Source: Laetmonice hystrix (Eukaryota). Taken from it: a stretch of DNA of 64,000 nt. This document shows positions 340-47,148 of this stretch, piece by piece; the stretch's first letter is position 1; every line of letters begins with the position of its first letter. The notes below the pieces were generated by a model. It had not been told where the DNA came from. It saw nothing but the letters and a program-made list of their open reading frames with translations, and ran no database searches. The stretch lies in contig OZ249438.1 of NCBI GenBank assembly GCA_965235115.1, positions 30,628,001 to 30,692,000 on the forward strand, read 5' to 3'. The translations under genes were made by a program, and so were the position numbers.

Positions 340-605
340 CTATAACTAGCACGTTGCAAGGGATTCCCGCCTTGCCACGACTCTACAGACTAGAGATGTT
401 CTCTAGATATACAAGTTCATCCTCGATTATGTACAAATTGGGTGAGACTCCAAACCAGCCCTAAAATATACAACTTCAGTTCGAAAGGGATTGAAGGAAC
501 CCCCCCCCCCCCAACACTTGGAGTACCTCTAGCACGCAAGTGTGCCACTGGATTACAACGTGCAACCTCTACCATTAAAGATGGATGATCTGTTGTGATA
601 TTTAC

Positions 606-1623
606 CTCATATCCACAGGGTCTATCTCTATTGATTTGTTGTTTGTGCTGTCTCTGACTCGGTTGCTTTTTTGCAAGTCTCTTTCGTCTAAGAGATCTTT
701 TGTATTTTGCACACTTAGTTGTGCATTATTCAAGTCTTTGATAAATGTCTTGTGGCTGGACTTGTCGATGGACAGGTCCATATTGCGCTGTGGGTTGGCT
801 TTACTAAAAGTTCTAGATGAGTCTTGTTCCTCGTTTGTAATTTTGAGGCTAACATTGTTCGGGGGTATTGTATTTATAATTGTAGTGTCCATGCACTTTG
901 TATGATTATTCATACTGTTTATTTCGTTCTGTTCGTTCTCCTTTCTAATGTTTGAGTTGTCTTCTTGGGTGCGTCGCTTGTTGCACAACAAGAAGACTAT
1001 AATAATGATAATAATCAGTATCGGTATTCCGACACCGAGGCATATAATGAGCAGCAGTTGCTGCATAGTGACTACGGACGGATCCTCTGAGTGAACCACT
1101 CCCTGTGCCGGGCCCGGAGTCTCCTCGGCCGGGCTCCGGGTCGACCCGCCGCTCGTCGGCGACAGCGGGTACGAAACGCCATCGGGCGGGGGTACTCCTG
1201 GCGGGAAATCACAGTTCTTGCCGGTAAATCCAGGGGGACAGCTGCACTCATAATCGTTCACCTGATCCGTGCATTGGCCGCCGTGTAAACATGGGTTGGC
1301 CTCACATTCGTTTATATTCACTCGGCAATCTTTGCTCTCGAATCCAGGAGCACAGTCGCACATGAAATCATTCACAAGATCGTGGCACGTGCCTCCGTTA
1401 GCACACGGCAGGTTGAGACAGTCGTCCACGTCATCTTGACAGAGAGCACCCACAAAACCTGGCACACATCGACACTGGTAGTCGTTCACTCGGTCGATGC
1501 ACGTTCCTCCATTGACGCAGGGTTGAATGGAGCAGTTGTTGTCATCCACCTCACAACGGGTGCCACTGTATCCGCTGGGACATGCGCAGCGGTAACCGGC
1601 GATTTCGTCGATACACCGGCCAT
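606..1623 (-). CDS. Delta: Delta exon 9 (EGF6-9, stalk, TM helix, intracellular domain)
   Basis: Acceptor TTTGACAG at 1626-1624; calcium-binding EGFs; TM LLLIICLGVGIPILIIIIIIVFLLC then NKRR; ends at donor AG|GTAAAT (605), or at TAA 604-602 if unspliced. Confidence 0.95.
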
Positions 1624-3299
1624 CTGTCAAATACACAACAAAGATGATATAAGTCCCAATGTCAACAATTATAAACAATCTACCATTTCTGTATGTCCAT
1701 CCCCATTCGGAACTCACACAGGTACGGCTACCCCCTCCCCCGCGTCACCCCCCCCCCCCCGCGTCACCCCTCAACCCCCCCCCCCCCCCCCGCGTCACAC
1801 CTCCCCCTCCCCACACGCAAAAATTCACTCCATTATATGCGATTTTCATTTTAATCACTGCAATATGACAAAATCTGATATATTCGTGTCTTTGGTTCAA
1901 CCTTGGTGAACGTTTCAAACACGGACATATATATATTTAAATCTACAAAGGTGTCATTGTGAGCCGGACCCAACAAAGTGTGTGACCTGCCCACCTTCGT
2001 GAGACCAGACAACTTTGTGAACGGCACAAAGTAGGCCGCCATTTGTGACGTTCAATTAGACCCAATTTTGGCGGGAGAAGGTAGTGGGCCTGGCCACGGC
2101 TGGCCCCTACATCTTGCCGTTTGGATTCCGGCTGATTGCTGATACAGAGACACACAATGTTGCTCGACACGTGCGTTGCGTGTGCCCACTATCGGAATTC
2201 TTGATGAGTTTAAATTGCCGCCCGATATCCCCTTAAATGATAGGTACCTGCAATTTCATTATATGTGCACTTCCGTATGATAGAAAGACATGGTGGCCAA
2301 CATTGCTTTAACCCACAAGAAAGGAACATGCAAGGATGTCGGAACGGGGGGGGGATACCCCCCTCCCCCTTAAACTTTCCCCCAAGAATTAAGATTGTGC
2401 CGCGATAGGCCGGATTTGAACATGATATGATAGGCTGAATCAGACATGGACTTCTGTCCCCAGCCTCTCGAACCATAGGTATTTTGACGTAAAATGACAC
2501 AGCCCTATAGAAAGGCTAGGGTCGGATTACAGCATCCCTTTAGGCTATCACTCGTTATATAATGGGTAAATTGGGCAACTAGGTCAAACGCTGCACATGG
2601 AGCAGGAGCCAATCAGAATGCGGGCCGGTTGCGTGGGGTCTTTGGCCCCTGGCGCCGAGATTTAAGCTTATTGACACGGTGGTTACAATAAGCAGTGTAA
2701 TGGATGCCCATCCTCATCTCCCGTCTACCGTCTAAAGAAGCATGATTTAGGCAGTCCAAACTATGCACACAGTCATAAGTATCAGTCGGTATCACGCTGA
2801 GTGGTAAAACATATGGAAACGAGGAAACGCATCCAAGTTTGATCAAACAATATTCGGCTTGTATTACGGCCCGACTGTGTTGAGTGGCAGCTATGTTAAT
2901 ATGACTAACCATTAGGACCAGCATCATAATTTGCTGAGGCAGCTCCCCATTTCAGTGGTCTCCATCGCCAGATTATCAACCAATCGATGTGCGTGCCCAC
3001 TTTGTGCCCCACTAGGCGGCAGTTGTCAATAGAACCACTTAAGTGGCGGTTAAACCACACTCTGGGAACACACGCACACAACGCACACAGGCACTCGGCC
3101 ATGCGCGTTTAAAAGATGCATTTCGGAAATCAATTCCTTTTTGAGGCTCAAACTGACAAACAACAAATCATGAGAAAGGTCTAGATTATCAAGTATTATG
3201 TGAGACCGAGTAAATGGTGTTCAGTTCTGCGTACAAAATGTATATCAGAAGAACGCAGTTTGTGTGACCAACAGAGAAAGCGATAGACGCGACACCTAC

Positions 3300-5415: not shown

Positions 5416-7988
5416 CTGGAAAGAGATGAAAAAAAATGGTTGTTTTGTTATTTTAGGACTAAAATCAAACTGGACAGTGATGTGGGAAACAGAAAGAGTA
5501 GAACGCTTGTGGTGATTGTAGTCAGAATACCAGCCAGGGGAATTTAAACCAGTCCAGATAGAGAGAAAGGGAGAGGGAGGGAGAGAAAGCGTTGTGTATA
5601 CATGACAATGATAACTGTTAGTAGACCTTGGCCAGCGTCGTTTGGAGACACCCGGTTAGTATTGGTGAATAGTAAACAGTATGAAACCTGAGAGTTACCG
5701 TACGGAAGGTACTGTTAAAACTGTTGAAAACACAACCAATCCTCCCTGCACTAGCTTCATAACTGACACACCCTAAACACCGCCAAAAAAACACCGCCTG
5801 GTTTCGGCGTGGCTTGTGCTCTTTTTGTTGTTGCACATGAGTCGCCCCTATGGTAGGACAGGTGGAAGAGGATGGACAAACTTTCGCTGGTAAACTATCT
5901 GAGACAGAAGTCCAAATCTAGAGATGACTAGCCTGTCAACAGTAGTACGGCATTACACCCCCCCCCCCCCCCCCGCCGTTTCGTTCACACACAGCATTAC
6001 TAGATTTAAATGAGAGGTTTCAAGCTATATGGTAGACTGGGTATACAACAGGGAGAAGTTATTACTGTCAGTCTATGAGAGGAGGTCGGGGTGGCAGGGA
6101 CGGAGGTGTTATTTGTCCAGGTGTGTAGATGCGGGAGGGTACGACAACCAGTCGGTGGTCGGAGCGAGGCCGTGGGAACGGGTGACCGCACAGTCTGGGT
6201 GGACGGACGCTCGCGTCTCCCCACGACCGAGGGGCAGTAAGGTGCACAGTAAATCGGTCACAGTGGAGAATTTCCTCAGGCAGCTGGTGTTGGGCCCAAC
6301 ACCAGCCCAGCTGCTGTCTTTGTAGCGCCCCTCCCCCACCTCTCAGCCACCCCCCGCCCCTCAATGAGGGGTTTGTGGTCGCCCAGCTGTTCGTAAAATG
6401 ACTACGCTGGCTGGAAAGCAACAAAAGCGCAGGTCAGTGCATGGTCTCGCCTCGATGCACCCACGTGACCAAGTGCCAGGACGCTGCCCCAAACTGCGCG
6501 TGCGGCACGCGTCGGTATGCAAATGAGGCAAATTCCGCCACCTTAAGAATGCCCGTCAGCCCACATGGATCCTCCGGGAGATCGAACTCAATGAAATCAA
6601 CATCACTGGTGGTAGATCCGATCATACCGAGATTTTTTTTACATTGGTACAACTTGTCCACAAAATAAACAGTTGCTACCTCATTATTATGCTAATAGGG
6701 TAACAGGTGTATAACAAGAATAAATAATACATAGGTAATCATTGGTACATCATGAATGAATTATCCAAGTTTACGTATTGTTTGATGATTTACGTTTAGT
6801 TATCCCATCAATTTGCCCCCTCCCCCTCCCCCCAGACTGGAGGTCATCCTTTCTCTGACCTCACGCAGACACACTCGTATCGGGTTCCGTCGATTTTACT
6901 GGGAAGTACAGAACAAGTGAACCGTGTCTGGGGCATTGCCTACCTGTTGTGATCACCATGGAGACCACCCCGTTACCATCCACCCTGTCCTAGATGACTC
7001 TTACCCATTCCAGCCTCCTGGGTTGTGCACACAGAAAGAACAAGTGCCTTTGTCATTCAGATCTAGGCACGCGACCAACGTCTTTTATATCGAGAGTAGA
7101 GGTAATGTTTTCATGAAGGGTTATATGCATATGAATGGTGACCCGACAAAAGGGAAAGTGATGCTACCAAAGAGAGGGGCTGACAGTTACCACGACGGGT
7201 ATTTTCTCACGCCCTACTCAACGCTTCCGAGTATGTGGTGGTATTTAGTTTGGTGTACCCTTCAGTGGAACTCTCAGAATGAGTGGGTGACGCCTCCGTC
7301 AACCAGACCCTCCACGTGTACCGTTCGAGTCAATGTCTCTCTGTTATTACTAACTTCATTCTAGAGTGAAACGGAAATCCCATGATATGAAAACTATTTC
7401 ATCTCTGACTGTCGGACACACAATAGTCGTGGTGACTTTTTTAGTGTCTACATCCCAGTTATTCCCTATTCTGTACCTGTGTATGTGGACGTAAAATTGG
7501 TATCATTTATACCGTCATGCGGAATACCAGGAGAATAGCGGTCATTCCCAGTGGATGAAAAGTCTCCGATTCCCATACTGTTCGCATGGAGGGGGGGGGG
7601 GGGGGGGGGGGTCACCTGTTGACTGATGCCAGAGGCTGCGCCCAGGATGATGAAACAAATCCTGTCTCACCTCGGGCCAGGTGACAGTTTGTTAGAGGTG
7701 GTTTGACCAGGGAACGACGCACCGTTTACGACTGCCCCCTTGGCCTTGTGGAAGGCAGAGTGTGGCTTCGGAAGGTATAGCATAGGTATACCGTAGGCTT
7801 GAGGCATGGCTTCAGAAGAACAGCCAGAAGGAAGGAAAGCGATAGAAGGCGAAGACCTAGATAATTAAGACTATATCTGCTGTCCACAAACATATCAAAA
7901 TGTCATTTATCGGGTGCTGGTTCACTCCCGAGAAACATGTTTTGCTTTCCCTTCATTGCACTTTCGTGGAGTAAACTGAGAAACTTAC

Positions 7989-8246
7989 CTTTGTCACAGT
8001 ACTCGCCAGTCCAGCCAGACCGACACGTTTTGGTGCCGTTTTCCGAGCACGTGTAGTGGCCAAAGTTGTCGTCACGTGGACGACACACGTGGAGGCAGCT
8101 GGGACCATAGTAGTCCTCGTCACATATAACTCGAAATGAGTACTGGAGATCTTTGGTGGTTGTATCGTACTCAAAGCTACTCCATTCTTTCGTTATGGCG
8201 ACAGACCGTTGGGTGGCATGACGGGCAATTAAATCCCTTGGGCTCC
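7989..8246 (-). CDS. Delta: Delta exon 4 (end of MNNL plus DSL domain)
   Basis: LIARHATQR...YSFRVICDEDYYGPSCLHVCRPRDDNFGHYTCSENGTKTCRSGWTGEYCDK; acceptor TTTTGCAG, donor G|GTAAGT; 258 nt. Confidence 0.98.
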
Positions 8247-11200
8247 CTGCAAAACAAAAGAAGACAGAGATATTAGAATCACACAAAATGTCTCCACGAT
8301 AATTGCTGGCAGAAAAGGAAACATCCCTTTGTATGTAGTGTTGTACCAAACTGCTAAAATCTGTCTGCCAAGACCGCACCTAGTTCGTCCACAGCTATTT
8401 AACAGATAATCGTGCTGAAGACAATTGAGTGTTGATTGCTACAGCAGCCATCCCCAGTTAATGTTCCGGCCTTTGAAGAATCCTTTGAGACCATGAGAGC
8501 TAGGGTAGGTGTCTACTGGGGACCAAACGCTCAGTTACAGACGTACAGATTTGGCGCCATCAAAACCAGCTTTCACAGGACGTTGTGGCCGTTTTCAAGA
8601 CGCCATCTGTTCATGGCAAGTTTATGACACGGTGAATGAAAAGAGAAATTTAAGTAGGTATCACGTGTCCACAAGTTTCAGAAGTGAAGGAGCCCCTTTC
8701 TTAACGAAAAAAAGGAGGCAAACTGTCGGATCCCCGGGGGTTGGATGCAGATTGTAGAGCGGTCTTCGCAAAAACCGGAAACATGTGTGCTCGACCGTCC
8801 AATATAGGACATGAAAGGACACACACGAGCTCAGGGCGGCGAATTATACTGGGATAATGCTGAATTAAACTTGGATAACGCAGAGCTATTTTGAACAGTA
8901 ATTATTTGAAAGGAAGTGGAGAAGGGCCCTCACAATCCGCTTAGGTTCCATTGAAAGGCCTAGGGCCGAGAGACGTTACCATGGTCCCGTTGGAGGGTGC
9001 ACTTGTCAACGCCTGGCCGTATGAAGGGTTGATATCCGGTAAATGGCTTGGTAGTTGCCACCATTAAACTTCAGGTGGGTTGACAAGCAGTCAATTTGGC
9101 GGCAAACAGTGAAGGTTAATTAGGAAAAGTATGCAGGTGTTCGTCCGATGGGGGACCTATTAAACTTCAAACACTTTGGGTCCTGGTGTTCTTTTACTAT
9201 TTGTTACAATCTGTTAACTTGAAGGAAAGCAACAGTGAACTTCATGAATTGAACACGCTCGTCGTTTTGTAAATAACACTGGGGTCCAACATGAACTAAG
9301 TATCCATTCACGTCATCCTTACTACAATCTTACCATGATGTACAGTTACGTACGACTTGTAGTCGTAAACTAAGGTAACTAAGGATATGGGACGCATTAG
9401 GTCTTGACTGCAGTTAGCAGTTTTATAACATGCTACTTTGTGGTTTATTCGGCATTTGGTCACCATGGATGCGGTTAGCAACAGATGGAGTCAGTTCAAA
9501 ACACCAGACCTATATTATCATGCTGGTTCTGCGAATTTCATGTTGGGAAAGTTACAACTGCCTTGGGTGTAACCCCCTGCCCCCCCCCCCCCCCCACACT
9601 CACACAAACATCACCAGGTCCCTCGAACGAGGTGCACCTGGTCCATTAACATGGCCGATAGGCTGAGAGCAAGAAAACACCTGTGTGCCCACATGTCACC
9701 TGTTCTCATACTAAAGCCCCGCCGGTGGGTCAGCCAAACAGGGAATTAGAGAATCGGGTTGACAGGGTTGTCGTTTCCTGCAAATCTCCATATCTTTCCT
9801 TATCAGGGAAGCCAGTATCCTGACTGCAGTCTCTCTTTGTGATACGTTGGCATCCAACACAGGTTTAGTCAGTGCGACTCATTCAAACAAAAGTAGGCTT
9901 ACTTATAATTTATAACCAAGTAAAGATGTATACACATGCGTACGCAACATATGAATTTAAATTTGCCTGCCCGACAGCCAGATTTGGAAAGGTAAAAGAG
10001 GCCTTGGTTGGTAGCCTATATATCCGTACTGCCACCAAGTTTTACACATAGAGACACATTGAGGGAGAGCGGGTATGTTTTGTGGATGTCATTGTAAGCA
10101 AAGCGACTGACGGACGCTACGCTGGGTTTACATATCCCACAGTCGGGCGCCGTCGACCGTGACCGAGCTCGGCATATTTGAAATCCTCACGGGTTAGAAT
10201 TATACGAAGGTAAACAAGGCGATGAAGGAGGGCTAATCTAGAGCTCAAGTGTCATTTAGACGTATTAGTCTACCCAGCGAGAAACGGTCCATATTACTGC
10301 AGGGGTCCTACATACCTTGAGGTAGCTACATTATAGAAAGGGTCAGTTAACCTGGGACAAAGGTAGAACCTGCCACTGAACTAGGTCTGTGCCGAGGGAT
10401 GAGAGAACTGGGGAGCAGCACACGTGGGGTGGAAGCTGTCTGCAGACATAGCCGTCTGTGGGCGTCCCTGTGATGTCTTTACATCCAGACATATACAACC
10501 ATAAACATACTGCATTTAGGATTAGACATCATTGTATATGCAGGCCTGCGTACATTTTCATTCATACATTGCAAGCCATTATCCATCTTTTCCACATGGA
10601 CGTATTGGTTGTAGGCATACAACATATAGTATATGTGCATAGTACTCGTAGTACGATAATGTCGTACGATAATGTTGTCGGCCCTATTACCGGCGTTGTG
10701 GGGCATGTGTGGCAGGCTCGCGGGCGTACACAGAGGTGAGCGACAGCTGAGCACATGGCGGCAGGAAATAGGCCCAGTCCCAGGCCCGGCCCCAGCCCGG
10801 CCAAACCGCGTGTTTCACCACGACCATCTGCCGAGTCAACCGACCACGTGTGCATCATGTCAGATGTATGTTTGTGTGCCTTTAACCGACATGTCGGAAC
10901 AAATTGCACAAGTCGCGTCAGATCGTCGCTGACGATGGGCATAATGTGGTGGTAATGTTGATAGGCTAGGTTTGCCAGCTGTTACTGTGGGACCGAGGAG
11001 AACTTTCCAACTATCAGAGATAGAATTTTGATCTATTGGTAAACGGTATACGTTACAAATTTGTAGAAAGACTCCCATGGAATAGAAATCCAGTCTATTC
11101 TGACCACGACGTCCTTGTTCCCTTTTTGCAGAGTCTGGAGCAGCCACTAAATAATCAAGTCCAGATTGCACGTGGGACCAGAGCAGCTGTAGGCTACGTC

Positions 11201-13294: not shown

Positions 13295-13597
13295 CGGCCA
13301 GGCGAACTCGAACGGGAACCGGATGGGGTTAGTGAATCCATTCTCACTGCTCTTCCTCTCAGGGAAGTCAAACGAGTTGCCTCCAAGAACTCCAGAAGTG
13401 ATAGTTCCAAAGGTACATGGAGCATCCGGGGAAATTTTGGCCTGGTAATGTTTCAGGCACACGCGGAAGAATGTCCGACATTGTGATCTACATGATCCTT
13501 CAGTCCGTATTCCACGGCAACAGTTTTCGTCGAAGTTCAATCCTCTGTCATTTCTAAATGACTTGAGGTGCAGTTCAAATACTCCGGACGAAGATAC
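13295..13597 (-). CDS. Delta: Delta exon 2 (MNNL/C2 domain, VSSSGVFELHLKSF...CRTFFRVCLKHYQ...PIRFPFEFAWP)
   Basis: Acceptor CAG 13600-13598, donor CCG|GTAAGT at 13294; typical Notch-ligand motifs SGVFEL, CRTFFRVCLKHYQ, PCTFG, PF-F-WP; 303 nt. Confidence 0.97.
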
Positions 13598-13831: not shown

Positions 13832-13894
13832 CTCTAAAACAAATGACAATAATTGTAACGTCCAAATAACCCCTAGTGGTTTAGATATCCGCAT
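13832..13894 (-). CDS. Delta: Delta exon 1 (signal peptide MRISKPLGVIWTLQLLSFVLE)
   Basis: ATG at 13894-13892, hydrophobic core, donor GAG|GTAAGA at 13831; 63 nt, phase 0, in frame with exon 2. Confidence 0.88.
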
Positions 13895-24126: not shown

Positions 24127-24398
24127 AAGTCCACGTGCCATGTCGTGGATGACGTACCTAAAGTCCACGTGCCATGTCGTGGATGACGTACCTAAAGTCC
24201 ACGTGCCATGTCATGGATGACGTACCTAAAGTCCACGTGCCATGTCATGGATGACGTACCTGAAGTCCACGTGCCATGTCATGGATGACGTACCTGAAGT
24301 CCACGTGCCATGTCGTGGATGACGTACCTAAAGTCCACGTGCCATGTCGTGGATGACGTACCTGAAGTCCACGTGCCATGTCATGGATGACGTACCTG
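24127..24398. repeat. Minisatellite, 34-bp unit x8 (AAGTCCACGTGCCATGTCRTGGATGACGTACCTR)
   Basis: Exact 34-bp period, units at 24127+34n. Confidence 0.98.
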
Positions 24399-26862: not shown

Positions 26863-29439
26863 GACCCTATCTTATTGCTGCTCCAGGCTCTGTTTACAAT
26901 TTTGTGACGTCACCCACCACAGTGGAGCACTCAGTGGTGCCGAACAGAGCGTTTTCAGCACGGGGATGATGTTACCCACTCCCGTCACTCACAGCGGGGT
27001 TGGTAAGGGTGTGTATGTTGGGGGATCCGTAGAAGATGTTTTTTGTGAAATATATTCCAACTTACAAGTAAAGTGGCATGATTATGACCCCCCCTCTTTA
27101 AGATGTAATCCTCTATAGAGCTATGCAGATACATGTACTGACGTTGTATATCGTGACTGGAACCTATTGAAAAAAAGTGATTCTCTCACTCACCCTTACT
27201 CAAAGATGTACCGTAATCGCCTGATGTCCTGATCCATGAAGTTAATAACATCTGAGGTTTGTATGGCTTATACGTCTCCTGTATATGTCAGTTGAGAGGA
27301 GAAGACAGGGTATATATGCGCCCCCTGCCCACGTTAGATAGTGACACTGGTAGCGAACAGCGGGTGAACTCCCGCTCCATGTTCTAACACCAAACTGAGC
27401 TTTCGGTTTGGTGAAAATCAACTCGACGTGTATATACCAGCATCCGTTTAAGATGGAATCTACATCTGCCCCCTCCTGTTCCTGATTGACACGGCGACAA
27501 GCCGGAATCACTCGCGAGCTCTATTCTACTTTACCTCCCCGAGAGACGGAGGCTCGCGGCTGTGGTCTATTGTTTACTGGTCGTGTGTTGATTGACCAGA
27601 CATGCCGTGCATTAGTCACTAACCAAGACGAAGAATGAAACGGGGAAGTGGCTGAGGACTCGGGAAGAAGTAGGGTGGTACAGAGAAAACAGACGCTCTC
27701 TCATCGATTATAGTCTCTTGAGGGACGATTTGTTGATGGTTTAACGTTATGTTTGACCTTTTCATCCTTCGTAACAAATTGGTAAGTGAAGACCAAGTCC
27801 CTGAGGGCGTTCTTTATTTGTCTTCGTAATCTTATATGAAAAAAGAACATCTAATTTAAGGATTTCCGTTGGGTGAGCGGACATGTCGCACTAAGGAGGG
27901 ACGTGAGACAGCGTTCGCCACCGTAACATCGTTAAGATTCCAGCGACCTTACGAACGCCGGGGGTGAAATCGTACATTCCTAGAAATGAGCTTCTGTTAG
28001 TGTAGTGCGGAGGCTGGTACGGGGGACGGGGTGAGCTTCGTGGTCGTAGGACATGGGAAACCACCGAAAACCTGAATTATGGCCCCTCCTACACTGCACT
28101 TCAATATACCCCACCCCCGGACATGTCTGACCAGCGATTTTTAGTAAAGGATTATCATGTGGTTCTAAACCAGGAGTTAACAGGAAAGGATTTTCTTAAA
28201 CAACACGTGAGTAAGGATACGTCAAGAGGCCGGTTTGAAAACTCTGAAGGGGTCTAAAACGTACACTTGGAGGGGGCGGGGGGTCCCTGGGACTCCGAAA
28301 TCAGGGAGGGGGTCAAACTTTGATGCGTAGTTCTCTGCTGAGCGGTCAGGGGTGCGGAGAGTGAGACGAGGTGGCAGGGTTGGCGGGTAGTTCAGTATGA
28401 AGAGCACTTCCAAACGGGTGCACGTTCATGTCTACTCACTTCTCCCAGTCAGACGACCAACTAACAGCCGTGCGCGCTCCTCCTGGCTCGCCGGCTAAAC
28501 ACGGACCACCATACCCGTTATAACGCGGCAAAGGAAGGGTGAGACGAAGGTCCCCAACAGTTGTTGTGCGCCCGGACATATTACATATGGTCCTATAGCC
28601 AGAATACCTCAGCTACTGTCCATTCATCCATCCAGCCATCTCATTCCAGGCATGTGTAAGGGGATGGTCCAACTTCTGAGTTAGGGAAGCTGGGGTGGAT
28701 CTAAGGGCCCTCTGTTAATGCGAAGAGCCTAGACCGCTATATATTATAGGTATATATGAGCAAGTAGAGTGGCGGTAAAGGATCCACCTCTATACCTACC
28801 GACCCCCCCCCCCCCCTTGCCCCACCCACTCCAGCAGGGGGATTCCCACGGATTAGTTTGGGTGGTAGGTGTGGATCCTCTCGCTGGAGTCTGTCTGGGC
28901 GGCGGGCCGACAGCAGCCGGCGACTTCCCGACGTCACTCACTGACATCGTCCGCCGGCCACACCCAGGCTAGGCTCGCCTCACGTCGTCTACACTCCCTC
29001 ACGCTCCGCCAGATGGCACTCGTATCAACACGTGCATGCTTCTTTTTTTTACATGTTACATCAGAGAACACCATGGTGAGAAAACATAGAGACCTGTATT
29101 GACAACACAGTGCTGTATACTGTGTAGTTCTCATAATAATCAGGGTCGGATTATATGATATTATGTCGTAAAGGATTCTAGAGATATATAAATATACGGT
29201 ACGGGTATAATTTAACTACTGTATAGGAGGATGAATCTTTCGAAGGCTTGAGTATATTGGGCTATTTGTATAAACCAAACTATAGGTATGTTTTTATCAT
29301 AAAACATGATTTTTGTGTTGTTTTAATATTATGCAAGACAAACATGTCTTAATGTCATCGTGAACATTATCATAGATCGACACAGATGCAAGTGTAACCC
29401 ATGAATGTGGCGATGAATCAAATTATCACACACACCATC

Positions 29440-30409
29440 ATCTCACACGTCATGTATTAGAAAGAACAGTCCGTGGCTGCAGGCAGGTAGAGCCTAACAT
29501 GATGTGTTGATCATTCTCACACGTCAGTATTAGAAAGAGCAGTCCGTGGCTGCAGGCAGGTAGAGCCTAACATGATGTGTTGATCATTCTCACACGTCAG
29601 TATTAGAAAGAGCAGTCCGTGGCTGCAGGCAGGTAGAGCCTAACATGATGTGTTGATCATTCTCACACGTCAGTATTAGAAAGAGCAGTCCGTGGCTGCA
29701 GGCAGTTAGAGCCTAACATGATGTGTTGATCACTCTCACACGTCATGTATTAGAAAGAGCAGTCCGCGGCTGCAGGCAGGTAGAGCCTAACATGATGTGT
29801 TGATGATTCTCACACGTCATGTACATGTATTAGAAAGAGCAGTCCGTGGCTGGAGGCAGGTAGAGCCTAACATGATGTGTTGATCATTCTCACACATCAG
29901 TATTAGAAAGAGCAGTCCGTGGCTGCAGGCAGGTAGAGCCTAACATGATGTGTTGATCATTCTCACACGTCATGTATTAGAAAGAGCAGTCCGTGGCTGC
30001 AGGCAGGTAGAGCCTAACATGACGTGTTGATTATTCTCACACATCAGTATTAGAAAGAGCAGTCCGCGGCTGCAGGCAGGTAGAGCCTAACATGATGTGT
30101 TGATGATTCTCACACGTCATGTACATGTATTAGAAAGAGCAGTCCGTGGCTGGAGGCAGGTAGAGCCTAACATGATGTGTTGATCATTCTCACACATCAG
30201 TATTAGAAAGAGCAGTCCGTGGCTGCAGGCAGGTAGAGCCTAACATGATGTGTTGATCATTCTCACACGTCATGTATTAGAAAGAGCAGTCCGTGGCTGC
30301 AGGCAGGTAGAGCCTAACATGACGTGTTGATTATTCTCACACATCAGTATTAGAAAGAGCAGTCCGTGGCTGGAGGCAGGTAGAGCCTAACATGATGTGT
30401 TGATCATTC
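29440..30409. repeat. Tandem repeat, 73-80 bp unit x13, with exact 300-bp higher-order duplication
   Basis: Unit TTCTCACACGTCAGTATTAGAAAGAGCAGTCCGTGGCTGCAGGCAGGTAGAGCCTAACATGATGTGTTGATCA; 29761-30060 equals 30061-30360. Confidence 0.98.
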
Positions 30410-37616: not shown

Positions 37617-40600
37617 CTGCTTAAAAAAGGATGTACGTCCACTCAACTTTAGACGGACCCCAAAATTTGATGACAACAGGGATCTACCCAGAAGTAAAAA
37701 GTATAATAAGGATATATATAAGACGGTTTGCAATTTATGCTGCTTTACACTGGTCAGCCGTTATCAGATTTTTCATTTTAAATTCCAGATTATTGGCATT
37801 TCACACTTCCTCCATACCATGCACTTAGTATGCAATTAAAAAAATATTGTGTGTACGTATATGGACGGAGAGGAGAAGGGCGCACATGTACGGTTCATAT
37901 GGTACAAGCGACGTGAAAAGGAAGCGCTGCTGGTTTTCCTGCATGTAGGGGCATTTCCCTTTGAGGGTTAGCGGTTGACCCCCTGGCGGTCGGTGTGGTG
38001 ACCCTTTCGACCCGACCTGACCAGCCTCAGATTCGACTGTCTCATAAATACATTGCGCCGACTGGCCCCCGTGGATGGAAGCTGATGTTTCCCGTTTACG
38101 TCGCCGGGCTGCGATCCATGCCGCTACCATAAAGTTCGTTCCCACGCTAGGGTCCCCAACCCAGTTCTAAGTGTCTCAGATTTCTCCAAACAGAACGTGA
38201 GCTACGTACGGCCTTTGTGCAACAGCAATATCTTCATCGGACAGCCTCCACATCGGCACAATAATAAACACAACGCTCTATCTCACTTTGGTTGATTGAA
38301 ATCATTACACCCATACTGGAATAATAAAGACAAGAGGCAACTGCAGCAATGGAATTTTCGAGTCACTAACATAACTGAACACAACAAATATATACAGATT
38401 GAGATAGGCCTACATTTATAACTCACGGTAGGCTGAATCTGACGACAAATTGACAACAAGTGAGGTATGGTTAAGACGTCTTACCTGGACGTATATACAG
38501 GCTGTCAGCCTAGCGGCGATGGTGAACACTCCCCTCCCTGACGTTGCCTGGAAACAGAGAGAATCCACCATGGATGAGCATGTAAATTCCCGGCAGACGA
38601 CAGACATGACGTTCACAGAAGGCGTATCAATGGTAGTCTCACATGTACGTTGACGTGAAGCGAAAACGTCATTCTTGGGACGGAATCGTGAGGGTGAGAA
38701 TCCCCCAAATGCACCACAGTGCCCCGATCTTGCAGAAACACGACCAGCAGTACTGTTGATGGTCACTCAGTATAGAACGAACCAGCGGTCGTGCGCGTGC
38801 GGCGGGATAAAAGCATCCGGGCCTCCGGGGATACTAATCTGCATATCGCTGACATGAGGTGAAGGATGCAGAGCACATCACACACTAGGACGCGCGTGCA
38901 CCACACATCACGCAGGCCACCATGCAGAGGACAGCTGTTTTTCCATTTCACGGTAGCCATGACCAAAATGGCTGGTAGCAATAACAAGACAAGTTTTAAG
39001 GGCGAAGAGAGGAAAAAAGACTTTTCATTCGTTCCTAAATGTTTCTTTGTAGGGCTGAATCTATTACTAGGCCCCTATATAGAAAGCTCTTAGCAGTCCT
39101 CCACTGATCAGGTCATATTGCAAATAACGCTGGTCGAAAAGACTAGCCCTAAGCCAAAAGCAAGACAGTGGCTGGCATTACCCAGATTCCATTGCTAAGT
39201 GAGCGAAATCGTTCCCACAGACGTGGGCCATAACAAAGTCATTGTGGCGCGCAGAGCTGTGTTCAGACATGCCTTGTGACATCAGCAGTATCTTGGGCAG
39301 CCTATCCACCCGACACCTCCGCGTGTCTACACTACAGAAACGCTACCCCTCATCTTCCCACGCCTGCTGAATGCTGTCGGGATCGGAAGGAAGGAATCAC
39401 ACAGCCAAGCTATAGGCCTAAGCTTATATTCTGCTGAGGAATTTAGTTTTACGGGACAAGAGGGGGTATTAAATTAGGGGTGCTGCAGTTTAGTTAACAA
39501 AAATCCTAATGTTCTGCATGGATTGAAGCAGATCATCGACCGTTTCTTTCGACATGTCATAAATATTTACACTGTGCTGTGGAGATCGACCTCCGTCTAT
39601 CTGAGGATTATAGGGCCAGCTGGTTGTCTTGGACGTCAGGACGTCATTAGTACCAATCAACAGCCAAACCTCCACTCAGATGTTTCTATGGTGATGATGT
39701 AGATATTAGGGTGAAGAGGCACAAACCCTGTATGTGGGCCACTGTCATTATGACTAATCATAAATGACCCAAAGAAAGGTTTTATGGGGTGCAGGCTTGT
39801 CACAGAGACAGGTATTGATGGAGGAGGATGTATCGACAGGCGAGAGTGACCTGAGCGTTGTCACAGTTCACATGCTCACCCCTCAAAGAAGGATAGCCTA
39901 AAATTATGGACCTCTATGTGTATAGGGTTGGGGTTGGAGGGGGGTTGGGGGTCAGAGCTGCCGGAGCCAGTTCAGGACCTTGGTAGAAGGATTATCCCCC
40001 CAAAATGCACTTTTTGGTTATGCATGCATTAGATGCATGATGGTATAAATGAAAATCACTGACTGCGGTTTTCACTGTAACATTTGACAAAGGCGAACAC
40101 GAATCCTATGATCAGTAAGTGTTTGTAGTTCACATGAATTTGAACATGTAACAGCGGCAAGTGGGAGGAGAGGGAGGAGGCACCAGATAATGATGATAAC
40201 CTTGTATTTGTGTTCACTCCCGCATAATGTAGCCTAGTAATCGATATGCAGATACCAAAAGTACAGCAGAATTAATCATATAATCTCTCTCTTGTTATCA
40301 TCATGATCGAGTCGTTTTACACTTGTGGTAGAGATGTGGCCAGCAGAGGATTGAAATTGGCTTGATGGAAATTGTAATTTTGTTTGAATTTCAGAAACAT
40401 GTTCACATCGACGGGTGGGATAATCGAATTTTTAAATTGACCTTATTATACGCCTAGCTCAGAAGATCAGCCAATCGTCGTCTTCACCTATCACGATCAC
40501 TGATTTGTTCCCTTGAACATCTTATACGCCTACCGATCTATTATGGGCCCATTTTTTTTTTTTTTTTTTTGGTGTGTGCCAAAGGCCATTTCGTCAAACT

Positions 40601-41226
40601 GCATGACGTAGGATAGGCCTCCCATTGCACAACATCCTGTAAAGAGGATTCGAAACGGTTTAATATCATGCTATGTGTGCATAACTGTATTGCGATCGAG
40701 ACATCTAAAGCAGGGCTACCGAGGCGTCCAGGGGTTGTCGTTGTAGACGTTGCGTTTAGCGATGATTCATTCGAGAGCGAGAGCGTTGCCATGCGGCATT
40801 TTCACGAATGTTTGGATATCGTGTCGCACAGAGCGGTAAATCCCGTCGGAGGAATGTGTTACCGCCGCGTGGGAAAGTGGAAGGACAGTTCGTCTTGTAT
40901 CGATGGTACCGCACTGGTAGCATGCGCGCACTCACTGGCCTACCTAACAGCCTATCCTGGGCCTGGTTTCGTACATCTTACCAGTATCTAATACTTTGTC
41001 ACTGGGAGCCCACGATGATACTTGAAAAAAACTTTGGCCACCACTCCGCTGTTATTAATGATTTTCAAGATCCTTTCCACCTTTAACCCCCCCCCCCCTT
41101 AGTGCGAAAGTGGGACTAGGAACGTAATGCTAACTCAAGCATCCAGCGTTCAGACAGGACAGGCGTGCCCCGAGGACACGTGAGGAGTCGAGGTTGGTTT
41201 AGGTTTACTCCTGTTGAGAATAACTA

Positions 41227-41343
41227 AGTATGATCTATGGACCGTCACAGGTTGATACTAATAATTGAGTATGATGTATGGACCGTCACAGGTTGATACT
41301 AATAACTGAGTATGATCTATGGACCGTCACAGGTTGATAGGAA
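41227..41343. repeat. Tandem repeat, 41-bp unit x2.8
   Basis: GATCTATGGACCGTCACAGGTTGATA at 41232, 41273, 41314. Confidence 0.93.
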
Positions 41344-43986
41344 TAACTGAATGAAGTCCCTTCGTTATACAGATCAGGATTTCGGAACCCTTTCCAGGGG
41401 CCCAGCCCGTCTGTACTAAACGCGGTAATCATGGTCCTTAAACTTTGTACCGCAAAAAGTGACGTAATAAGGTCCATAGTGACGCCTGGGTATGCGTTAC
41501 GGTATCAGTTTTATATCAACTAGAAAACGGATTCGGTCTTTCAAACGTAGCATTTCTCAGATAGGTGAGTTAGGCTGCTGTAAGTTTCGGTACCCGGAGG
41601 GCTACTGACAATACTGATACTCAATAATAGTGTTTACTTTGTCAAACCTAACGGTTGCATTCAGTCCACGCTCTGCCTGCAGCCGTAAAGCACGGGTATA
41701 AAGGCAGTTCTTAGGCCTGTATGTCGGACGATACAATCTTTTAACTACAAGTTGTGAACCCCCGAGTGATGGAGTCGGAAGGGTAGAGTATGTAGCCACT
41801 AGATTGTCGAGCTGGTATATAGCCTTGCTGGAGCCTCATTTGGTATGATCCCAGCCTTTTCCTCAGCCTTGTACGAGTTATATATCCATGGTGGAATTCT
41901 CATTGGCAGGCAAGATTTAATCTTTCCGGCGTCTTTTTCAGGTTTCCTGCAGAGTTCTCTCATCGAGTCTCAGTGACAGTGAGTATCCTAATGAAATTAT
42001 CTCAGTAGATCTACTGTAAGTTCTCCGTTGTATTCGTTCAGATTTGTTTGGGGTATCGTCTAGAACCTAGAAATTTTCTTTGTCTTTCAAAAGTCTTCTC
42101 TCTCCTCATCTGAACTCACCAGCCCCTAACCTCTGGATTATTTAGGACACAGGCAAACTGTAAATATAATTTGTACCTTCAAAGAGAAATACTGTAGCTA
42201 TAAACATCTCACCATGTACGATGTGAGATTTTATTTTAAAAATCTAACTCCTGGTCAAGGTTGAAGGAAATCATAAACCAAATGTTCACGAGACCATGAA
42301 CACGGAGACACGGGGCTTTTGACTAGGCCTATGTGGTTCTCCCCTCTCTAGATAAATTATGCTTGTCCTTATAAGGTGAGACATCCGCTACTTTACCAAA
42401 GGCTTTTTTCACTTGGTTTCACAAATACTTCAGGTTAAAACAAGAAATTAATATTACTACAATGTTTTCGATTAACTTTCCCACAGATGTTTTTTTAATA
42501 CACTATGACTTTCAGGCGCAAAAGGTCAGGCTGGTGATCCTTTCAATAACCAATCATGGAAAAGTCAACAAGGTGTTATCAGGATGATCAATAACATCAA
42601 GTCAACGACACATGTCACTTACAAAGACATAAACACCCCTTGAGCCACTCAGATTGTAAAATTCGCTCTTTTGACTTCTCTGTGTTTATCAATCATTAAT
42701 CTGTGTATATGATCCTGTGTACCTCAAGAGATCAGGCCCAGTTTTTGCACCCCGTCACTGCCTTGACAACCGTGGGAAGATGGTTGACATCTGTATGTTA
42801 GCATACACAGATATCTTCAATTCAGATTCGCTCTTCTACTTCTTACTGGGAGAACTTTGCCACTGATTATTTATACCCCACAAATGGTATTAGACGATTC
42901 TCACTACTCAAAAGCAAATATTGAATACTTTAAAACGGTGCAAAAATACTGAATTATTCACCACCAAAATCCTACACTACGTAGGCCTGTATCTTCTCTG
43001 GTACCACCCCTTACGAATTAGGTGGTAAGAAGACATCCACAAAATTATTCCTAAACTCACTCCTAACACTCCTAACTAAAATCCTCACTCACTCCGCTAG
43101 CGCCCCCCCCCCCCCACCTCCTCAGATTGTAGATTGAATCCTCAGTTAGAATCATAATGATGTCTTGGTCTGTCTCTATCTTCCTTTAGTATCACTCCAC
43201 AACTTTAATAAAACAGCATCAAACAGAAACATCAAACTCAGCTGCTGCAAACAGAAGTGAATTGACTTACACTTCATTGGCAGAATTTGACATGTGATTT
43301 CAGTTGGCAGAACTTGAAACGGACACTGCTGGTTTCCTGCCAGAACTCGGCACACTGATAGTTAATAAAGCAGTTTAAAGGTGACATGACATGAATGAGA
43401 TGTTGCTTTCACCACAGGTTTATATCACCATTTTCTAATCTTGTCTTAGAGGCCGACGGGTTCTGATCGTATACATTTGTATTTATACGGCTCATGTTGT
43501 CTGGGGAAACCAGTTGCACAAGCCATAGGCAGTCCCGTGGAGTCAGGAGGGGTAATTGCGTGTTTGTGGCCAACTTAATTACCTGACTTATCCACCCGCC
43601 TCCTTTCACAGGTATCTACACAGACACCATATCAACAACTCCTTTTCCCACGCTCTCTACCCAGCTATCCATGGTATCGTGTAGGTGAGATTGATAGGCA
43701 TGTCTTGCTCTGGCTGGCTGAGCAGCCACTCAGATATATGACCAAACCTTTTTCTCTGTGTCATTATACTGAAGTGGGTCAATGCCTGGTGTGTATTAAG
43801 TATTGGTTCTACCTGCCTGAATCCGGAGCACCTGGATGTTCTGAGGAAGTACTGGTATTGTTTTCAGTGCTCTTCCTGCTCTGATGAGGCATTCAAACCC
43901 CAGCACATTGAATGCGGTGCTACTCAGTGCACGTTGTTTCAGATTTAAAAATCTCCATGAGAAGAACGGTTTGATATCTCCATTAA

Positions 43987-44326
43987 AGGTGCTATTCGTC
44001 TCGCACAGAATGGCATTTCTCCTATCATACATTGTGCACATAGTACTAGAAAAAATTCCTACCGATACCATTGGCCTGATGAACCTTCTATTAGTTTGTG
44101 TGCAGCATTTGAAACCTATCTCGGTGCGCACCGAGATACAGCCATTTCCTATGGTGGGGCGTGTCAGGGTCTCCACAGGCCTTCTGAGAGAGCCCCATTT
44201 GTGCCGTTATCCATGAAAAATTTTGATTTCCTTTGTTGTGAATCTATTTCCATGATAGGTGGGATCACATAAACGTCAACAAAATTAAAAATAAAAAAAA
44301 TGAATTTTTGTTCACGAATAGCACCT
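43987..44326. mobile_element. Kolobok-type MITE (340 bp)
   Basis: TTAA TSDs (43983-43986, 44327-44330) and perfect 13-bp TIRs AGGTGCTATTCGT; no coding capacity. Confidence 0.85.
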
Positions 44327-47148
44327 TTAAAAGCTAGTGCTTTCATTGAGAAAAATCTTTAATCGTTTAAACCCATCGTGTAAACTATGTTTGGCTAAAT
44401 AAACTTGTGCCGTGTAAGCCTTCAACTACGTAATTGTAATACATACTGTAAAGTAATAGTTGCCATTGAATAGTGCTCTTTTATTTAGTCTCATCAAGTA
44501 GAGTTGACGGTATTTATCTCTTGTTGGATTCTGAATTAAGGCCCCATAAGTCTGAGACCATCTACTGTGGAGGGTCTCACAGAACAGGAGCTGTACTTAC
44601 TGTCTCCGTAAGATGTGATGTTACCCGCCCATATATAGGGTTCAAGCATTTTTCAAGTAGCTTTTTATCTACCCCAGATTAGTTAGTTATTTGCTTAGTG
44701 AAAAATGTTTCATGATCTAATTCTTGAATGCAAACTGGGTGTGGGTGTCCCAATGACAGTGACCTAAGACAGTCTTGATGTAGAGTGGGGGCTTTGTTGC
44801 CTATTGTGGAGTTAAAATAGATTTGACAGTTCTGCCTTGCAACACTAGCAGAGAAGTACCCAGATCCTCATCGCTCATAGTGGCTTCTACCCCATGCACC
44901 ATTGTGGGGATGGCCACTTCAATTCAATGTTACGAATAGAAAAAGGTGAATAATACCTTTCTTCAGTTTCTATCTAAGGTCAAGAACAAAATATCCGATG
45001 GGTTGGTCCTGACTCACCTGAACATGAAAAAAGATGTTCGTCCATCATTGCGAGGGTAAAATCCCGGCTTGGCTGAGGTGATGATAGTATCCACGGGTTG
45101 TGGTCAACTGATACTATCATACCACTGGTGATAGTTGAGGTATCGACCCCATGGGCCCACAGAGGTCAGTAGATGACATACCAGTGCTTTTAGATCATAC
45201 ATTCGATTAGTAAGCATCTCGTTCATTCTTTCCGTCCTGTGTTGTACATGTGTAAATCCATAGATATCTTCATGCAGATCCATAAAGCACAAGTCAGCTG
45301 GCACATGATGAGTGAGTAAAGGACAGGAGTGCACTGAGAGACACTCACAGAGAGAAAGAGCGGGTGTGTGGGCGTGTGTGATGTTAGTGGGGGTGAGTGC
45401 ATACTCTATGGTGTGTGTGTGTGTCGGGGTGTGCCTGTATCTGTGGGAGTCAGTGATAACTGGGGCAGTGCCAAGCAGGCACCCGTCTGCACGGAGTTGG
45501 CCCACCCCTGACTTATGGCAGGATTCACCTGACTTAGACTAGACCCGTGGGAAAATGGATCGGTGCTGCAGTTGAGCACCTGCAACTGTCAAGTGGCAGA
45601 GTTCACTGGTTCTTGTCATGGGCATTGTGTCAGATATTAGAGAAGCCTTAACGTGGTCCCAGGCTTGACGTCTGCTGACTTTGAACCGTGCTGAATCTGA
45701 TTCACATCGGTGCTCACATTTGGGCAGAGATAATGGTACGACCAAGCAGGTTTATGTCGTCGAAGGGTACATCAAGACCCTCGAGGTCAGTAGTTCAAAT
45801 GTAGAAACGGGTGGCCAGATCTGACAAAGTTTATACGTCTGGATTTTACCATTTAAAACTACACTTTCTGCTTACTAATATCCCTCCCCCCTAAAGGAAG
45901 TCTACCTTCCGAAATACAATTCTCATGAAAGCTTTACCCCTCCCTCCCCTTATACAAAAAAGAAGAAAGAAAACAACTTGCTAAAATAGGAAGCCTTAGG
46001 ACAAAGGCTGTTGGAATTAATTATAGCAAGAGCAACAATTACTGTGTGGGCTTGGATTTTTTTTCTGCGAACGTTTTACATTCAAACACGTTAGAAATAA
46101 GTACCAAGCCTAGGGGTAATTTTTTAAAGTGCCATTTCATTCAGGAGAGGAAATATAAAATTATGCAGAGAAAAAGTTCAAGCCTGAGGTTTGGGGACAT
46201 TTCTATGCCTTATTATGATGTGGATGTCACTATAGGCGACTGATTCTGTCAGATGTTATACTTCCAATATTTATGTTGTCGCCTTGTACCAAAGGCCTTT
46301 TCGGGACAGTGAAGAAAGATTGATGACTCTTACATAAAGAGTCTCAGGTCTGCCTTGAAATGATCTGATAGGTTGTAACTGTTCTAAGTAGGTGAGTCAG
46401 CAACCAATTAGGCTCTTTGCAAACCTATATAAGTCACTGTAAATCATTTTTAACTATCTGTGCTCCTTAATGTTTAAATTGCGTCTTGTCTTCTCCTGGA
46501 TAATTAAAGGATCCTAGTTTTTAGTGTTATATTTATATCACAATGTAGTTTACGTGGTAGGCAGGTACAGTGACGAAAAGAAGAATTCCGAAGCTGTTAA
46601 AGAGAATTCGAAACCTGTGTGATTACCAGGTGTTGGCCATCCGGCTTTAGGTATGGGGATCTCTTCCCAAGGCCTGCTTATCACAAACTGTCCGTTACAG
46701 ACATGCCTAAACACTGGGTATATCGATAGGCTATTACTGTGTCAAGTGCTCTGGATGCCTCCCCTTCTGACGCTTATCACCGCTCAACTAGAGTGGAGCC
46801 GTGGGAAAATTCTTCTGCCGGTTTTAGTTGTGGTTGGCTGCACTCAAACTGTTTTTTTATGAAGTCTGGGTAACCGCAATACACTTGCGCATACATTTGT
46901 CATTGAGGCAAGGCAAACTACCGGCAGGATTGAGTGTTAAAACTTTGTGGACCCATCCAGAGTGACAGTGACATTACAGAGGTTGTGGTATCTGGCCACA
47001 GGGTGATTTCGGAACCCACTGAGTGGATCCTTGCTTATCTTCCATGCAAATATTTGTGCTTGCCTTTCAATTATCAGCATGGCCGATTAGGGCTGTTCGT
47101 CCCACGGTTTGATCGGTTTGATGGTAGTAAGGAAGGAATACTAAACGA

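What the first reader, a model, noticed from the sequence alone, without database searches (positions are those of the whole stretch)
29440..30409. Natural multimerised CSL array: 11 perfect Su(H) sites in a 73-bp satellite upstream of Delta
Seen: TTCTCACA (TGTGAGAA on the Delta strand) at 29514, 29587, 29660, 29807, 29887, 29960, 30034, 30107, 30187, 30260 and 30334, with two more units one base off. The period of 73 bp is about 7 helical turns. Each unit also has GCAGGTAG, and an exact 300-bp duplication shows recent expansion. Known: YGTGRGAA is the high-affinity Su(H)/RBPJ site, and synthetic Notch reporters use about 12 tandem sites. Rough odds for one 73-bp unit to contain it are about 1%, or about 5% for any array here. 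Inference: a repeat-born Notch-response element (or CSL-corepressor sink) 15 kb upstream of the ligand gene.
Basis: partly seen in the sequence, partly recalled or inferred. Interest (0 to 1): 0.75.

Follow-up and report, generated by a model that had tools for sequence, protein, structure and literature searches.

The report
Young minisatellite carrying CSL sites near Delta
A real, recently expanded 73-bp tandem repeat upstream of the Delta gene copies one Notch-pathway (CSL) binding motif 11 times. In this repeat-rich genome that is close to what chance gives, and a separate cluster of nine best-type CSL sites further upstream is the stronger lead.

Summary
A 73-bp minisatellite of 13.1 copies lies at 29437-30409. 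It has 11 exact TTCTCACA (TGTGAGAA on the Delta strand) at the stated places and an exact 320-bp internal duplicate. It sits 15.5 kb upstream of the start codon of a Delta gene, whose identity was confirmed here.

The repeat unit and both flanks occur nowhere else in the 627-Mb genome, so this is neither a dispersed satellite nor a transposon.

The function is not shown:
- About 10% of a random genome sample is minisatellite.
- An estimated 240-640 other arrays carry periodic YGTGRGAA, including an unrelated 72-bp array with at least 12 TGTGAGAAT.
- The odds of one landing upstream of Delta are about 2-5%, or 11% at the local site density.
- The sites are head-to-tail monomers of the less preferred type (T at position 1, A at position 5), 73-80 bp apart.
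- There are no paired sites and no sign of constraint on the octamer.

Most likely this is a neutral variable-number repeat that copied one site passively.

Unexpectedly, nine YGTGGGAA sites (seven CGTGGGAA) lie in single-copy DNA at 38139-46807, where 0.53 are expected (P about 6e-9). That is the better candidate Notch-response region, and it modestly raises the chance that the array adds to CSL input.

The parts
29437..30409 (.). Locus-specific 73-bp minisatellite: 13 units of 73, 74 or 80 bp plus a 7-bp partial unit
   Evidence: TRF; unit dissection; unique in the genome by BLAST and by patterns with up to 3 mismatches; single-copy flanks; present in independent short-read contigs at 3-10 times the flank depth
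29514..30341 (-). Eleven head-to-tail CSL consensus octamers TGTGAGAA (extended CGTGTGAGAAT). Plus-strand TTCTCACA starts at 29514, 29587, 29660, 29807, 29887, 29960, 30034, 30107, 30187, 30260 and 30334
   Evidence: no head-to-head partner at 13-19 bp; helical phase flips at the 80-bp units
29747..30366 (.). Very recent higher-order duplication: 29747-30066 is identical to 30047-30366 (320 bp, offset 300 bp = 4 units)
   Evidence: TRF period-300 row, 96% matches
13832..13894 (-). Delta exon 1: ATG and signal peptide MRISKPLGVIWTLQLLSFVLE, followed by a GTAAGA donor
13295..13597 (-). Delta exon 2 (approximate 3' end): VSSSGVFELHLKSFRND..., N-terminal MNNL/C2 domain
   Evidence: Pfam PF07657, E=1e-29; acceptor context
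7903..8379 (-). Open frame that holds the Delta DSL-domain exon
   Evidence: Pfam PF01414, E=6e-19
602..1717 (-). Open frame that holds the last Delta exon: EGF repeats, transmembrane segment and cytoplasmic tail
   Evidence: Pfam EGF/hEGF, 4 repeats
38139..46807 (.). Context, not part of the array: nine dispersed YGTGGGAA sites (7 CGTGGGAA, 2 TGTGGGAA) in single-copy DNA, starting at 38139, 39212, 39355, 40868, 42478, 42771, 43645, 45546 and 46800
   Evidence: genome-wide density 0.061/kb gives 0.53 expected, P=5.7e-9; no shared repeats; single-copy

Best explanation
This is a young, locus-specific minisatellite, probably variable in copy number. It arose by local tandem duplication (slippage or unequal exchange) in single-copy intergenic DNA 15.5 kb upstream of Delta. 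Its founding 73-bp unit held one monomeric CSL-consensus site of moderate quality, TGTGAGAAT. Array growth, including a very recent 4-unit duplication, copied that site passively to 11 head-to-tail copies. No selection for CSL binding is needed to explain it, and most likely it has no selected function. Shown: the anatomy, the uniqueness, the recent growth and the base rates. Inferred: neutrality. If the chromatin is open, the array would be expected to bind CSL as independent monomers and to add weakly and additively to the CSL input of the Delta upstream region.
For: The array, its units and the exact 320-bp duplicate are real. The unit and both flanks are single-copy in the 627-Mb genome. 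The genome is very rich in minisatellites: 40 TRF arrays and 10.8% of bases in a 150-kb random sample, against 8 arrays and about 4.5% in this window. Three YGTGRGAA at 55-85 bp spacing match 2960 times genome-wide, against 1558 for the reversed control. There are 8 distinct arrays in the first 7.8 Mb of contig C1 alone, including an unrelated 72-bp array with at least 12 TGTGAGAAT at C1:3146236-3147106. That implies about 240-640 such arrays, or a 2-5% chance of one in Delta's 50-kb upstream desert. The chance rises to about 11% at the window's own CSL-site density of 0.29/kb. Octamer columns vary as much as the others: 2 of 104 cells against 21 of 845. The leftmost edge unit lacks the site. 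There are no paired sites. T at position 1 competes about 3.7-fold less well than C, and position 5 tolerates changes (PMC4176381).
Against: The same gene desert holds a highly non-random cluster of nine optimal CSL sites in single-copy DNA, so the locus is probably CSL-regulated. Eleven consensus sites within 900 bp would then be hard for CSL to ignore. CGTGAGAAT, which shares the core and 3' base, is a functional Su(H) site in a Drosophila Notch enhancer, and Drosophila Delta has a Su(H)-dependent enhancer (bioRxiv 10.1101/055707). Twelve head-to-tail monomer sites suffice for Notch-dependent reporter activity in flies (PMC8494340). CSL site number acts in a dose-dependent way in C. elegans sygl-1 (PMC9058496). 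The array is too young for the absence of constraint to mean much.
Confidence: 0.6

Rival explanations
1. The array is a working, repeat-born Notch-response module. Its 11 monomeric CSL sites recruit CSL/NICD/Mastermind additively. Together with the older CSL-site cluster at 38-47 kb, it feeds Notch activity back onto Delta transcription, and copy number sets the gain.
For: Eleven canonical YGTGRGAA sites lie in 830 bp. The genome encodes a CSL whose DNA-binding exon is about 93% identical to Drosophila Su(H). An independent cluster of nine optimal sites lies in the same desert, P about 6e-9. 12xCSL head-to-tail arrays respond to NICD in vivo (PMC8494340). GTGAGAAT-type sites are functional, and Delta is under Su(H) control in Drosophila (10.1101/055707). 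CSL sites act in a dose-dependent way (PMC9058496).
Against: The base rate of such arrays is high. The site is the weaker variant. Spacing is 73-80 bp rather than 15-17 bp, with no paired sites. There is no constraint signal. Flanking sequence strongly conditions whether monomer arrays work at all (PMC8494340). No RNA, accessibility or conservation data exist.
Confidence: 0.25
2. The array acts as a sink or silencer. It either titrates CSL with its co-repressor or promotes NICD turnover ('bind and discard'), damping Notch output or repressing Delta by default.
For: It holds many CSL sites in one place. [quoted passage not shown]
Against: In Drosophila only paired sites coupled to pioneer-factor sites deplete NICD, and 12xCSL monomer arrays gave no phenotype (PMC7213981). 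The array has no paired sites. Eleven sites are few against about 38,400 YGTGGGAA genome-wide.
Confidence: 0.06
3. The unit works through other factors. Candidate sites are the ACGTCA/TGACGT bZIP half-site next to the CSL site and the CAGGTA E-box or Snail/ZEB-type site. The CSL match would then be incidental.
For: ACGTCA is in 9 units, CAGGTA in 12 and TTAGAAAG in 13. Any 73-bp unit holds several short consensus matches.
Against: These matches are even less specific (6-mers). CpG-to-CpA changes destroy the ACGTCA in 4 units. There are no data on binding.
Confidence: 0.06
4. The array is an assembly artefact, such as a collapsed or inflated repeat.
For: Short-read contigs break inside the array, so its copy number could not be checked independently.
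Against: Unit variants form a coherent higher-order pattern. Contigs from three runs join both unique flanks to the array's first and last units, and array words sit at 3-10 times the flank depth. These runs are one sample and may be the one the assembly came from.
Confidence: 0.03

Closest known systems
Synthetic multimerised CSL reporters (12xCSL-type head-to-tail arrays; PMC8494340, PMC7213981)
   Same: Both have about a dozen CSL consensus sites, all in one orientation, acting as independent monomer sites.
   Different: The synthetic arrays use the optimal CGTGGGAA at 15-17 bp spacing directly next to a minimal promoter. Here the site is TGTGAGAA(T), spacing is 73-80 bp, and the array lies 15.5 kb from the start codon. 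The units also carry about 65 bp of other sequence. Activity is untested.
Homotypic CSL/LAG-1 site clusters of natural Notch targets (C. elegans sygl-1, PMC9058496; Drosophila Notch and Delta wing-margin enhancers, bioRxiv 10.1101/055707)
   Same: Both use canonical YGTGRGAA sites upstream of a Notch-pathway gene. In those systems site number matters, and a GTGAGAAT-type site works.
   Different: Natural clusters hold 1-4 sites in unique, conserved DNA. That description fits the 38-47 kb cluster in this window far better than the satellite, whose sites are copies of one event.
Su(H) paired sites (SPS) of E(spl)/Hes genes
   Same: They use the same factor and the same core motif.
   Different: An SPS is head-to-head with a 15-17 bp spacer and binds cooperatively. 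None was found in the array or in the dispersed cluster.
Variable-number repeats and tandem-repeat enhancers, and binding sites born by local duplication (a tandem-repeat enhancer near the interferon gene, PMC13373173; local duplication forming fly regulatory modules, PMC3188502; both known to me from abstracts only)
   Same: Tandem duplication multiplies a binding site near a gene and can create or tune an enhancer.
   Different: In those cases activity was measured. Here only the sequence is known, and the host genome makes such arrays by the hundred.

Membership tests
Locus-specific minisatellite / VNTR | Head-to-tail tandem copies of a 10-100 bp unit | tested here: met
   Period 73, 13.1 copies, 92% matches; units aligned
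Locus-specific minisatellite / VNTR | Confined to one locus, with unique flanks and no transposon hallmarks | tested here: met
   Unit found only here by BLAST and by patterns with up to 3 mismatches; both flanks single-copy
Locus-specific minisatellite / VNTR | Copy number varies between alleles or individuals | tested here: inconclusive
   The only runs are short-read contigs of one sample, and they break inside the array. The exact 320-bp duplicate shows recent change
Notch-response element (CSL-dependent enhancer) | Matches to the CSL consensus YGTGRGAA | tested here: met
   11 exact TGTGAGAA, of the less preferred variant: T at position 1 and A at position 5 (PMC4176381)
Notch-response element (CSL-dependent enhancer) | The genome encodes a CSL factor with a conserved DNA-binding domain | tested here: met
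   PF09271 exons at C11:3.64-3.66 Mb; 54 of 58 residues identical to Drosophila Su(H) chain 5e24_E
Notch-response element (CSL-dependent enhancer) | Sites under constraint (conserved across species, or less variable than their surroundings) | tested here: inconclusive
   Octamer 2/104 minor cells against 21/845 elsewhere, so no difference, but the array is too young to give power. No related genomes were reachable
Notch-response element (CSL-dependent enhancer) | CSL occupancy and NICD-dependent activation | not testable with these tools
   No RNA or chromatin data; no RNA run holds the stretch
Su(H) paired-site (SPS) element | Two sites head-to-head with a 15-17 bp spacer | tested here: not met
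   No inverted partner with up to 2 mismatches at 13-19 bp for any site in the array or the 38-47 kb cluster
Multimerised CSL reporter architecture (12xCSL-like) | About 12 optimal CGTGGGAA sites at 15-17 bp spacing next to a promoter | tested here: not met
   The number is similar (11) and the orientation is uniform. The core is TGTGAGAA, spacing is 73-80 bp, and the array is 15.5 kb from the ATG (design in PMC8494340)
Dispersed satellite or transposon-borne repeat | The same unit at many loci | tested here: not met
   0 hits outside the array

The most novel reading that the evidence does not exclude
Delta in this animal is under direct CSL control through an old, dispersed cluster of optimal sites 24-33 kb upstream. 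The satellite is a recent, copy-number-variable add-on that multiplies monomeric CSL input. Array length would then be a heritable dial on the strength of Notch-to-Delta feedback: a natural counterpart of a 12xCSL reporter built by repeat expansion.
Probability: 0.15. Interest if true: 0.7.

Novelty: new member of a known kind. Interest (0 to 1): 0.35.

Why it matters
If the array were active, it would be a natural case of a signalling-pathway response element created and tuned by minisatellite expansion next to the pathway's own ligand gene. That would bear directly on how feedback strength evolves. As it stands, the value is mostly cautionary. In a genome where about a tenth of the DNA is minisatellite, any 8-bp motif is multiplied at hundreds of loci, so 'N perfect sites' counts as one event. 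The more useful product is the cluster of nine optimal CSL sites in single-copy DNA at 38-47 kb. It is a concrete, testable candidate for direct Notch control of Delta in an invertebrate-like genome.

Tried and rejected
- **Dispersed satellite or transposon origin: rejected.** The unit and both flanks are unique in the genome.
- **Neighbouring Notch-target gene as the true owner of the CSL sites: not found.** No Hairy_orange match lies on contig C3. There are no Pfam hits in the 10 longest open frames of 30-52 kb and no Rfam hits in 14-64 kb. DNA beyond the window could not be fetched.
- **Paired sites: none**.
- **Constraint on the octamer within the array: no signal**.
- **Constant helical phasing: rejected.** The 80-bp units flip the phase.
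- **Ancient large-unit repeat or transposon copies behind the nine dispersed sites: rejected**. Only a 350-bp high-copy element at 43979-44334 is repeated, and it holds no site.
- **Allelic copy number and transcription: not resolvable.** Only three short-read contig sets of one sample exist, with no RNA.
- **CpG-island-like features beside the array: nothing distinctive**.
- **Taxon identification through the protein atlas: uninformative**.
- **Paper search by raw octamers: returned only primers**.
- **Assembly artefact: judged unlikely**.

Full report
**1. Observation**

The sequence is as described. Tandem Repeats Finder gives one array at 29437-30409 with period 73, 13.1 copies and 92% matches, also scored at periods 147 and 300. 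TTCTCACA, which reads TGTGAGAA on the minus strand, occurs at exactly the 11 coordinates listed. The whole window has 14 matches against 3.0 expected from shuffles.

Cutting the array into units gives 13 units of 73, 74 or 80 bp and a 7-bp partial unit. Two units are one base off (ATCTCACA and CTCTCACA). Stretch 29747-30066 is identical to 30047-30366, so a block of four units (300 bp) was duplicated very recently. GCAGGTAG is in 12 of 13 units.

The gene on the minus strand is a Delta. Its exons match MNNL (E=1e-29), DSL (6e-19) and EGF repeats, followed by a transmembrane segment and tail. I located exon 1 at 13894-13832: ATG, signal peptide and a GTAAGA donor. Exon 2 starts at 13597. The array is therefore 15.5-16.5 kb upstream of the start codon.

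Nothing in 14-64 kb matched Pfam (10 longest open frames of 30-52 kb) or Rfam. The array lies in a gene desert of at least 50 kb.

**2. What the repeat is**

A BLAST of two units against the window's own 627-Mb assembly hits only this array. Two unit patterns, one exact and one allowing up to 3 mismatches, also hit only here: 11 and 13 matches, with none on the other strand or elsewhere. The 637 bp to the left and the 691 bp to the right are single-copy.

So this is a locus-specific minisatellite born in unique DNA. It is not a dispersed satellite or part of a mobile element.

Short-read contigs from three runs of a single sample join both unique flanks to the array's first and last units. Array words sit at 3-10 times the flank depth. 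The contigs break inside the array, so copy number and allelic variation cannot be read. A haplotype with clustered indels abuts the left edge at 29353-29426. No RNA run holds the stretch.

**3. Is it more than chance?**

The 11 sites are copies of one event. The relevant odds are those of one unit holding YGTGRGAA on either strand.

The genome-wide picture agrees:
- In a 150-kb sample (15 stretches of 10 kb from 15 large contigs), TRF finds 40 arrays with period of at least 15 and at least 3 copies. They cover 10.8% of the bases.
- This window has 8 arrays covering about 4.5%, so the Delta upstream region is not unusually rich in such repeats.
- Three YGTGRGAA spaced 55-85 bp apart match 2960 times in the genome, against 1558 for the same pattern read backwards.
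- The first 100 matches fall into 8 separate arrays within 7.8 Mb of contig C1.
- These include an unrelated 72-bp minisatellite with at least 12 TGTGAGAAT (C1:3146236-3147106), and 45- and 46-bp arrays with some 50 copies of TGTGGGAAG or TGTGAGAAAG.

Scaling by matches or by megabases gives about 240-640 such arrays. That is a 2-5% chance of one lying in Delta's 50-kb upstream desert. At the window's own elevated site density of 0.29/kb, the chance that one of the eight repeat units captured a site rises to about 11%. The coincidence is mild, and the finding was picked out after the fact because the gene is Delta.

**4. Quality and architecture of the sites**

On the Delta strand each site reads CGTGTGAGAATGA. 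It fits YGTGRGAA and the 9-mer YGTGRGAAH used for Drosophila.

It carries T at position 1. In gel-shift competition with Drosophila CSL, that variant competed about 3.7-fold less well than C. It carries A at position 5, a position that tolerates change (PMC4176381). A site with the same core and 3' base, CGTGAGAAT, is needed for the activity of a Drosophila Notch enhancer (bioRxiv 10.1101/055707). So binding in vitro is likely.

All sites point the same way and lie 73-80 bp apart. No head-to-head partner at 13-19 bp exists, so cooperative paired-site binding is excluded. Within runs of 73- and 74-bp units the sites keep the same helical face. Each 80-bp unit then shifts the phase by about 140-155 degrees, nearly half a turn.

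Across the 13 units the octamer columns carry 2 minor cells of 104, against 21 of 845 elsewhere. There is no sign of constraint, though the power is low in so young an array.

The genome does encode a CSL. Exons of the LAG1 DNA-binding domain lie on contig C11, and one exon is 54/58 identical to Drosophila Su(H). The motif should therefore apply to this animal.

**5. An unexpected neighbour**

Outside the array the window holds 18 YGTGRGAA. About 7.7 are expected, the reversed control gives 7, and the random sample is at chance level, 0.127/kb.

Nine of the 18 lie between 38139 and 46807. All nine are of the strongest YGTGGGAA type: seven CGTGGGAA and two TGTGGGAA. Seven of the nine are followed by A or C.

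- CGTGGGAA is the commonest 8-mer of that 9-kb segment after homopolymers.
- The genome-wide density of YGTGGGAA is 38,401 per 627 Mb, or 0.061/kb. That gives 0.53 expected, P = 5.7e-9, and under 0.001 such clusters expected by chance in the whole genome under a Poisson model.
- The sites have dissimilar flanks and share no repeats.
- They lie in single-copy DNA. The only repeated piece, a 350-bp high-copy element at 43979-44334, holds no site.
- Four of the CGTGGGAA sit in a stretch depleted of CpG, with observed/expected about 0.4-0.5.

No Hes-type gene lies on this contig. Delta is therefore the obvious candidate target, though DNA beyond the window could not be examined. This cluster looks like what natural CSL targets look like. 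It is a better candidate Notch-response region than the satellite.

**6. Mechanism and rivals**

*Most likely reading (about 0.6).* The array is a neutral, fast-changing minisatellite whose founding unit held one CSL-type site, by chance or as one of the many sites of a CSL-rich landscape. The site was then multiplied passively.

*Main rival (about 0.25).* The array works as an additive set of monomer CSL sites. In support:
- In flies, 12 head-to-tail monomer sites respond to NICD. [quoted passage not shown]
- Site number acts in a dose-dependent way in C. elegans (PMC9058496).
- The neighbouring cluster suggests that CSL acts on this locus.

*Sink reading (about 0.06).* In flies only paired sites next to pioneer-factor sites deplete NICD, and 12 monomer sites do not (PMC7213981). 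Eleven sites are also few against tens of thousands genome-wide.

*Other readings.* Other motifs in the unit (ACGTCA, CAGGTA) are no more than chance-level matches. An assembly artefact is unlikely.

**7. Comparison, novelty and verdict**

The array resembles a 12xCSL reporter in site number and orientation only. The core, the spacing and the promoter context all differ. It is not a paired-site element.

It belongs to the known kind 'minisatellite that multiplies a transcription-factor site near a gene', for which active examples exist (abstracts only). I file it as a new member of that kind, with function unproven.

Two earlier notes of this scan bear on it. The idea that a battery of such repeats encodes Delta's regulatory logic is weakened, because repeat density here is below the genome sample. 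Notes on the CSL gene, which I did not test, fit the picture of a genome in which tandem repeats copy whatever they contain.

Interest is moderate to low for the array itself. The nine-site cluster deserves follow-up of its own.

Noticed in passing
window 38139-46807: Nine dispersed YGTGGGAA sites (7 CGTGGGAA, 2 TGTGGGAA) lie in single-copy, mutually dissimilar contexts 24-33 kb upstream of the Delta ATG. 0.53 are expected from the genome-wide density (P about 6e-9). CGTGGGAA is the top non-homopolymer 8-mer of the segment. This is a candidate direct Notch/CSL control region.
   Followed up: partly
window 43979-44334: A 350-bp dispersed element has over 1100 candidate copies in the genome, and all 40 scored are 97-100% identical. 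It looks like a very young SINE- or MITE-like family.
   Followed up: no
G000 C1:3146236-3147106: An unrelated 72-bp minisatellite has at least 12 perfect TGTGAGAAT sites, a chance twin of the array studied. Similar larger arrays lie at C1:4681898-4684257 (46 bp, TGTGAGAAAG) and C1:7315471-7317669 (45 bp, TGTGGGAAG).
   Followed up: no
loci L020-L034 (15 x 10 kb genome sample): 10.8% of the sampled bases lie in minisatellite arrays (40 arrays with period of at least 15). This is a very minisatellite-rich genome. L032 (C18 at 5.0 Mb) is a higher-order satellite of about 875 bp period with an 18-bp sub-array in each unit.
   Followed up: partly
window 29353-29426: In one run's contig, a haplotype with seven small deletions and a CA insertion lies directly at the left edge of the array. 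The boundary is polymorphic or unstable.
   Followed up: no
window 19352-19892, 21065-21297, 22048-22239, 24127-24397, 37209-37616, 41219-41350, 47143-47295: Seven further minisatellites (periods 89, 22, 44, 34, 51, 41 and 39 bp) lie in the Delta upstream desert. None holds a CSL octamer.
   Followed up: partly
G000 C30 (1.73-17.8 Mb): Ten of 13 Hairy_orange (Hes/Hey-type) matches lie on one contig, with groups at about 2.43-2.51 Mb and 8.17-8.19 Mb. These may be tandem Hes gene clusters.
   Followed up: no
G000 C1:1017261-1111899: Seventeen YGTGGGAA sites lie in about 95 kb, where about 5.8 are expected. This is another region of raised CSL-site density.
   Followed up: no
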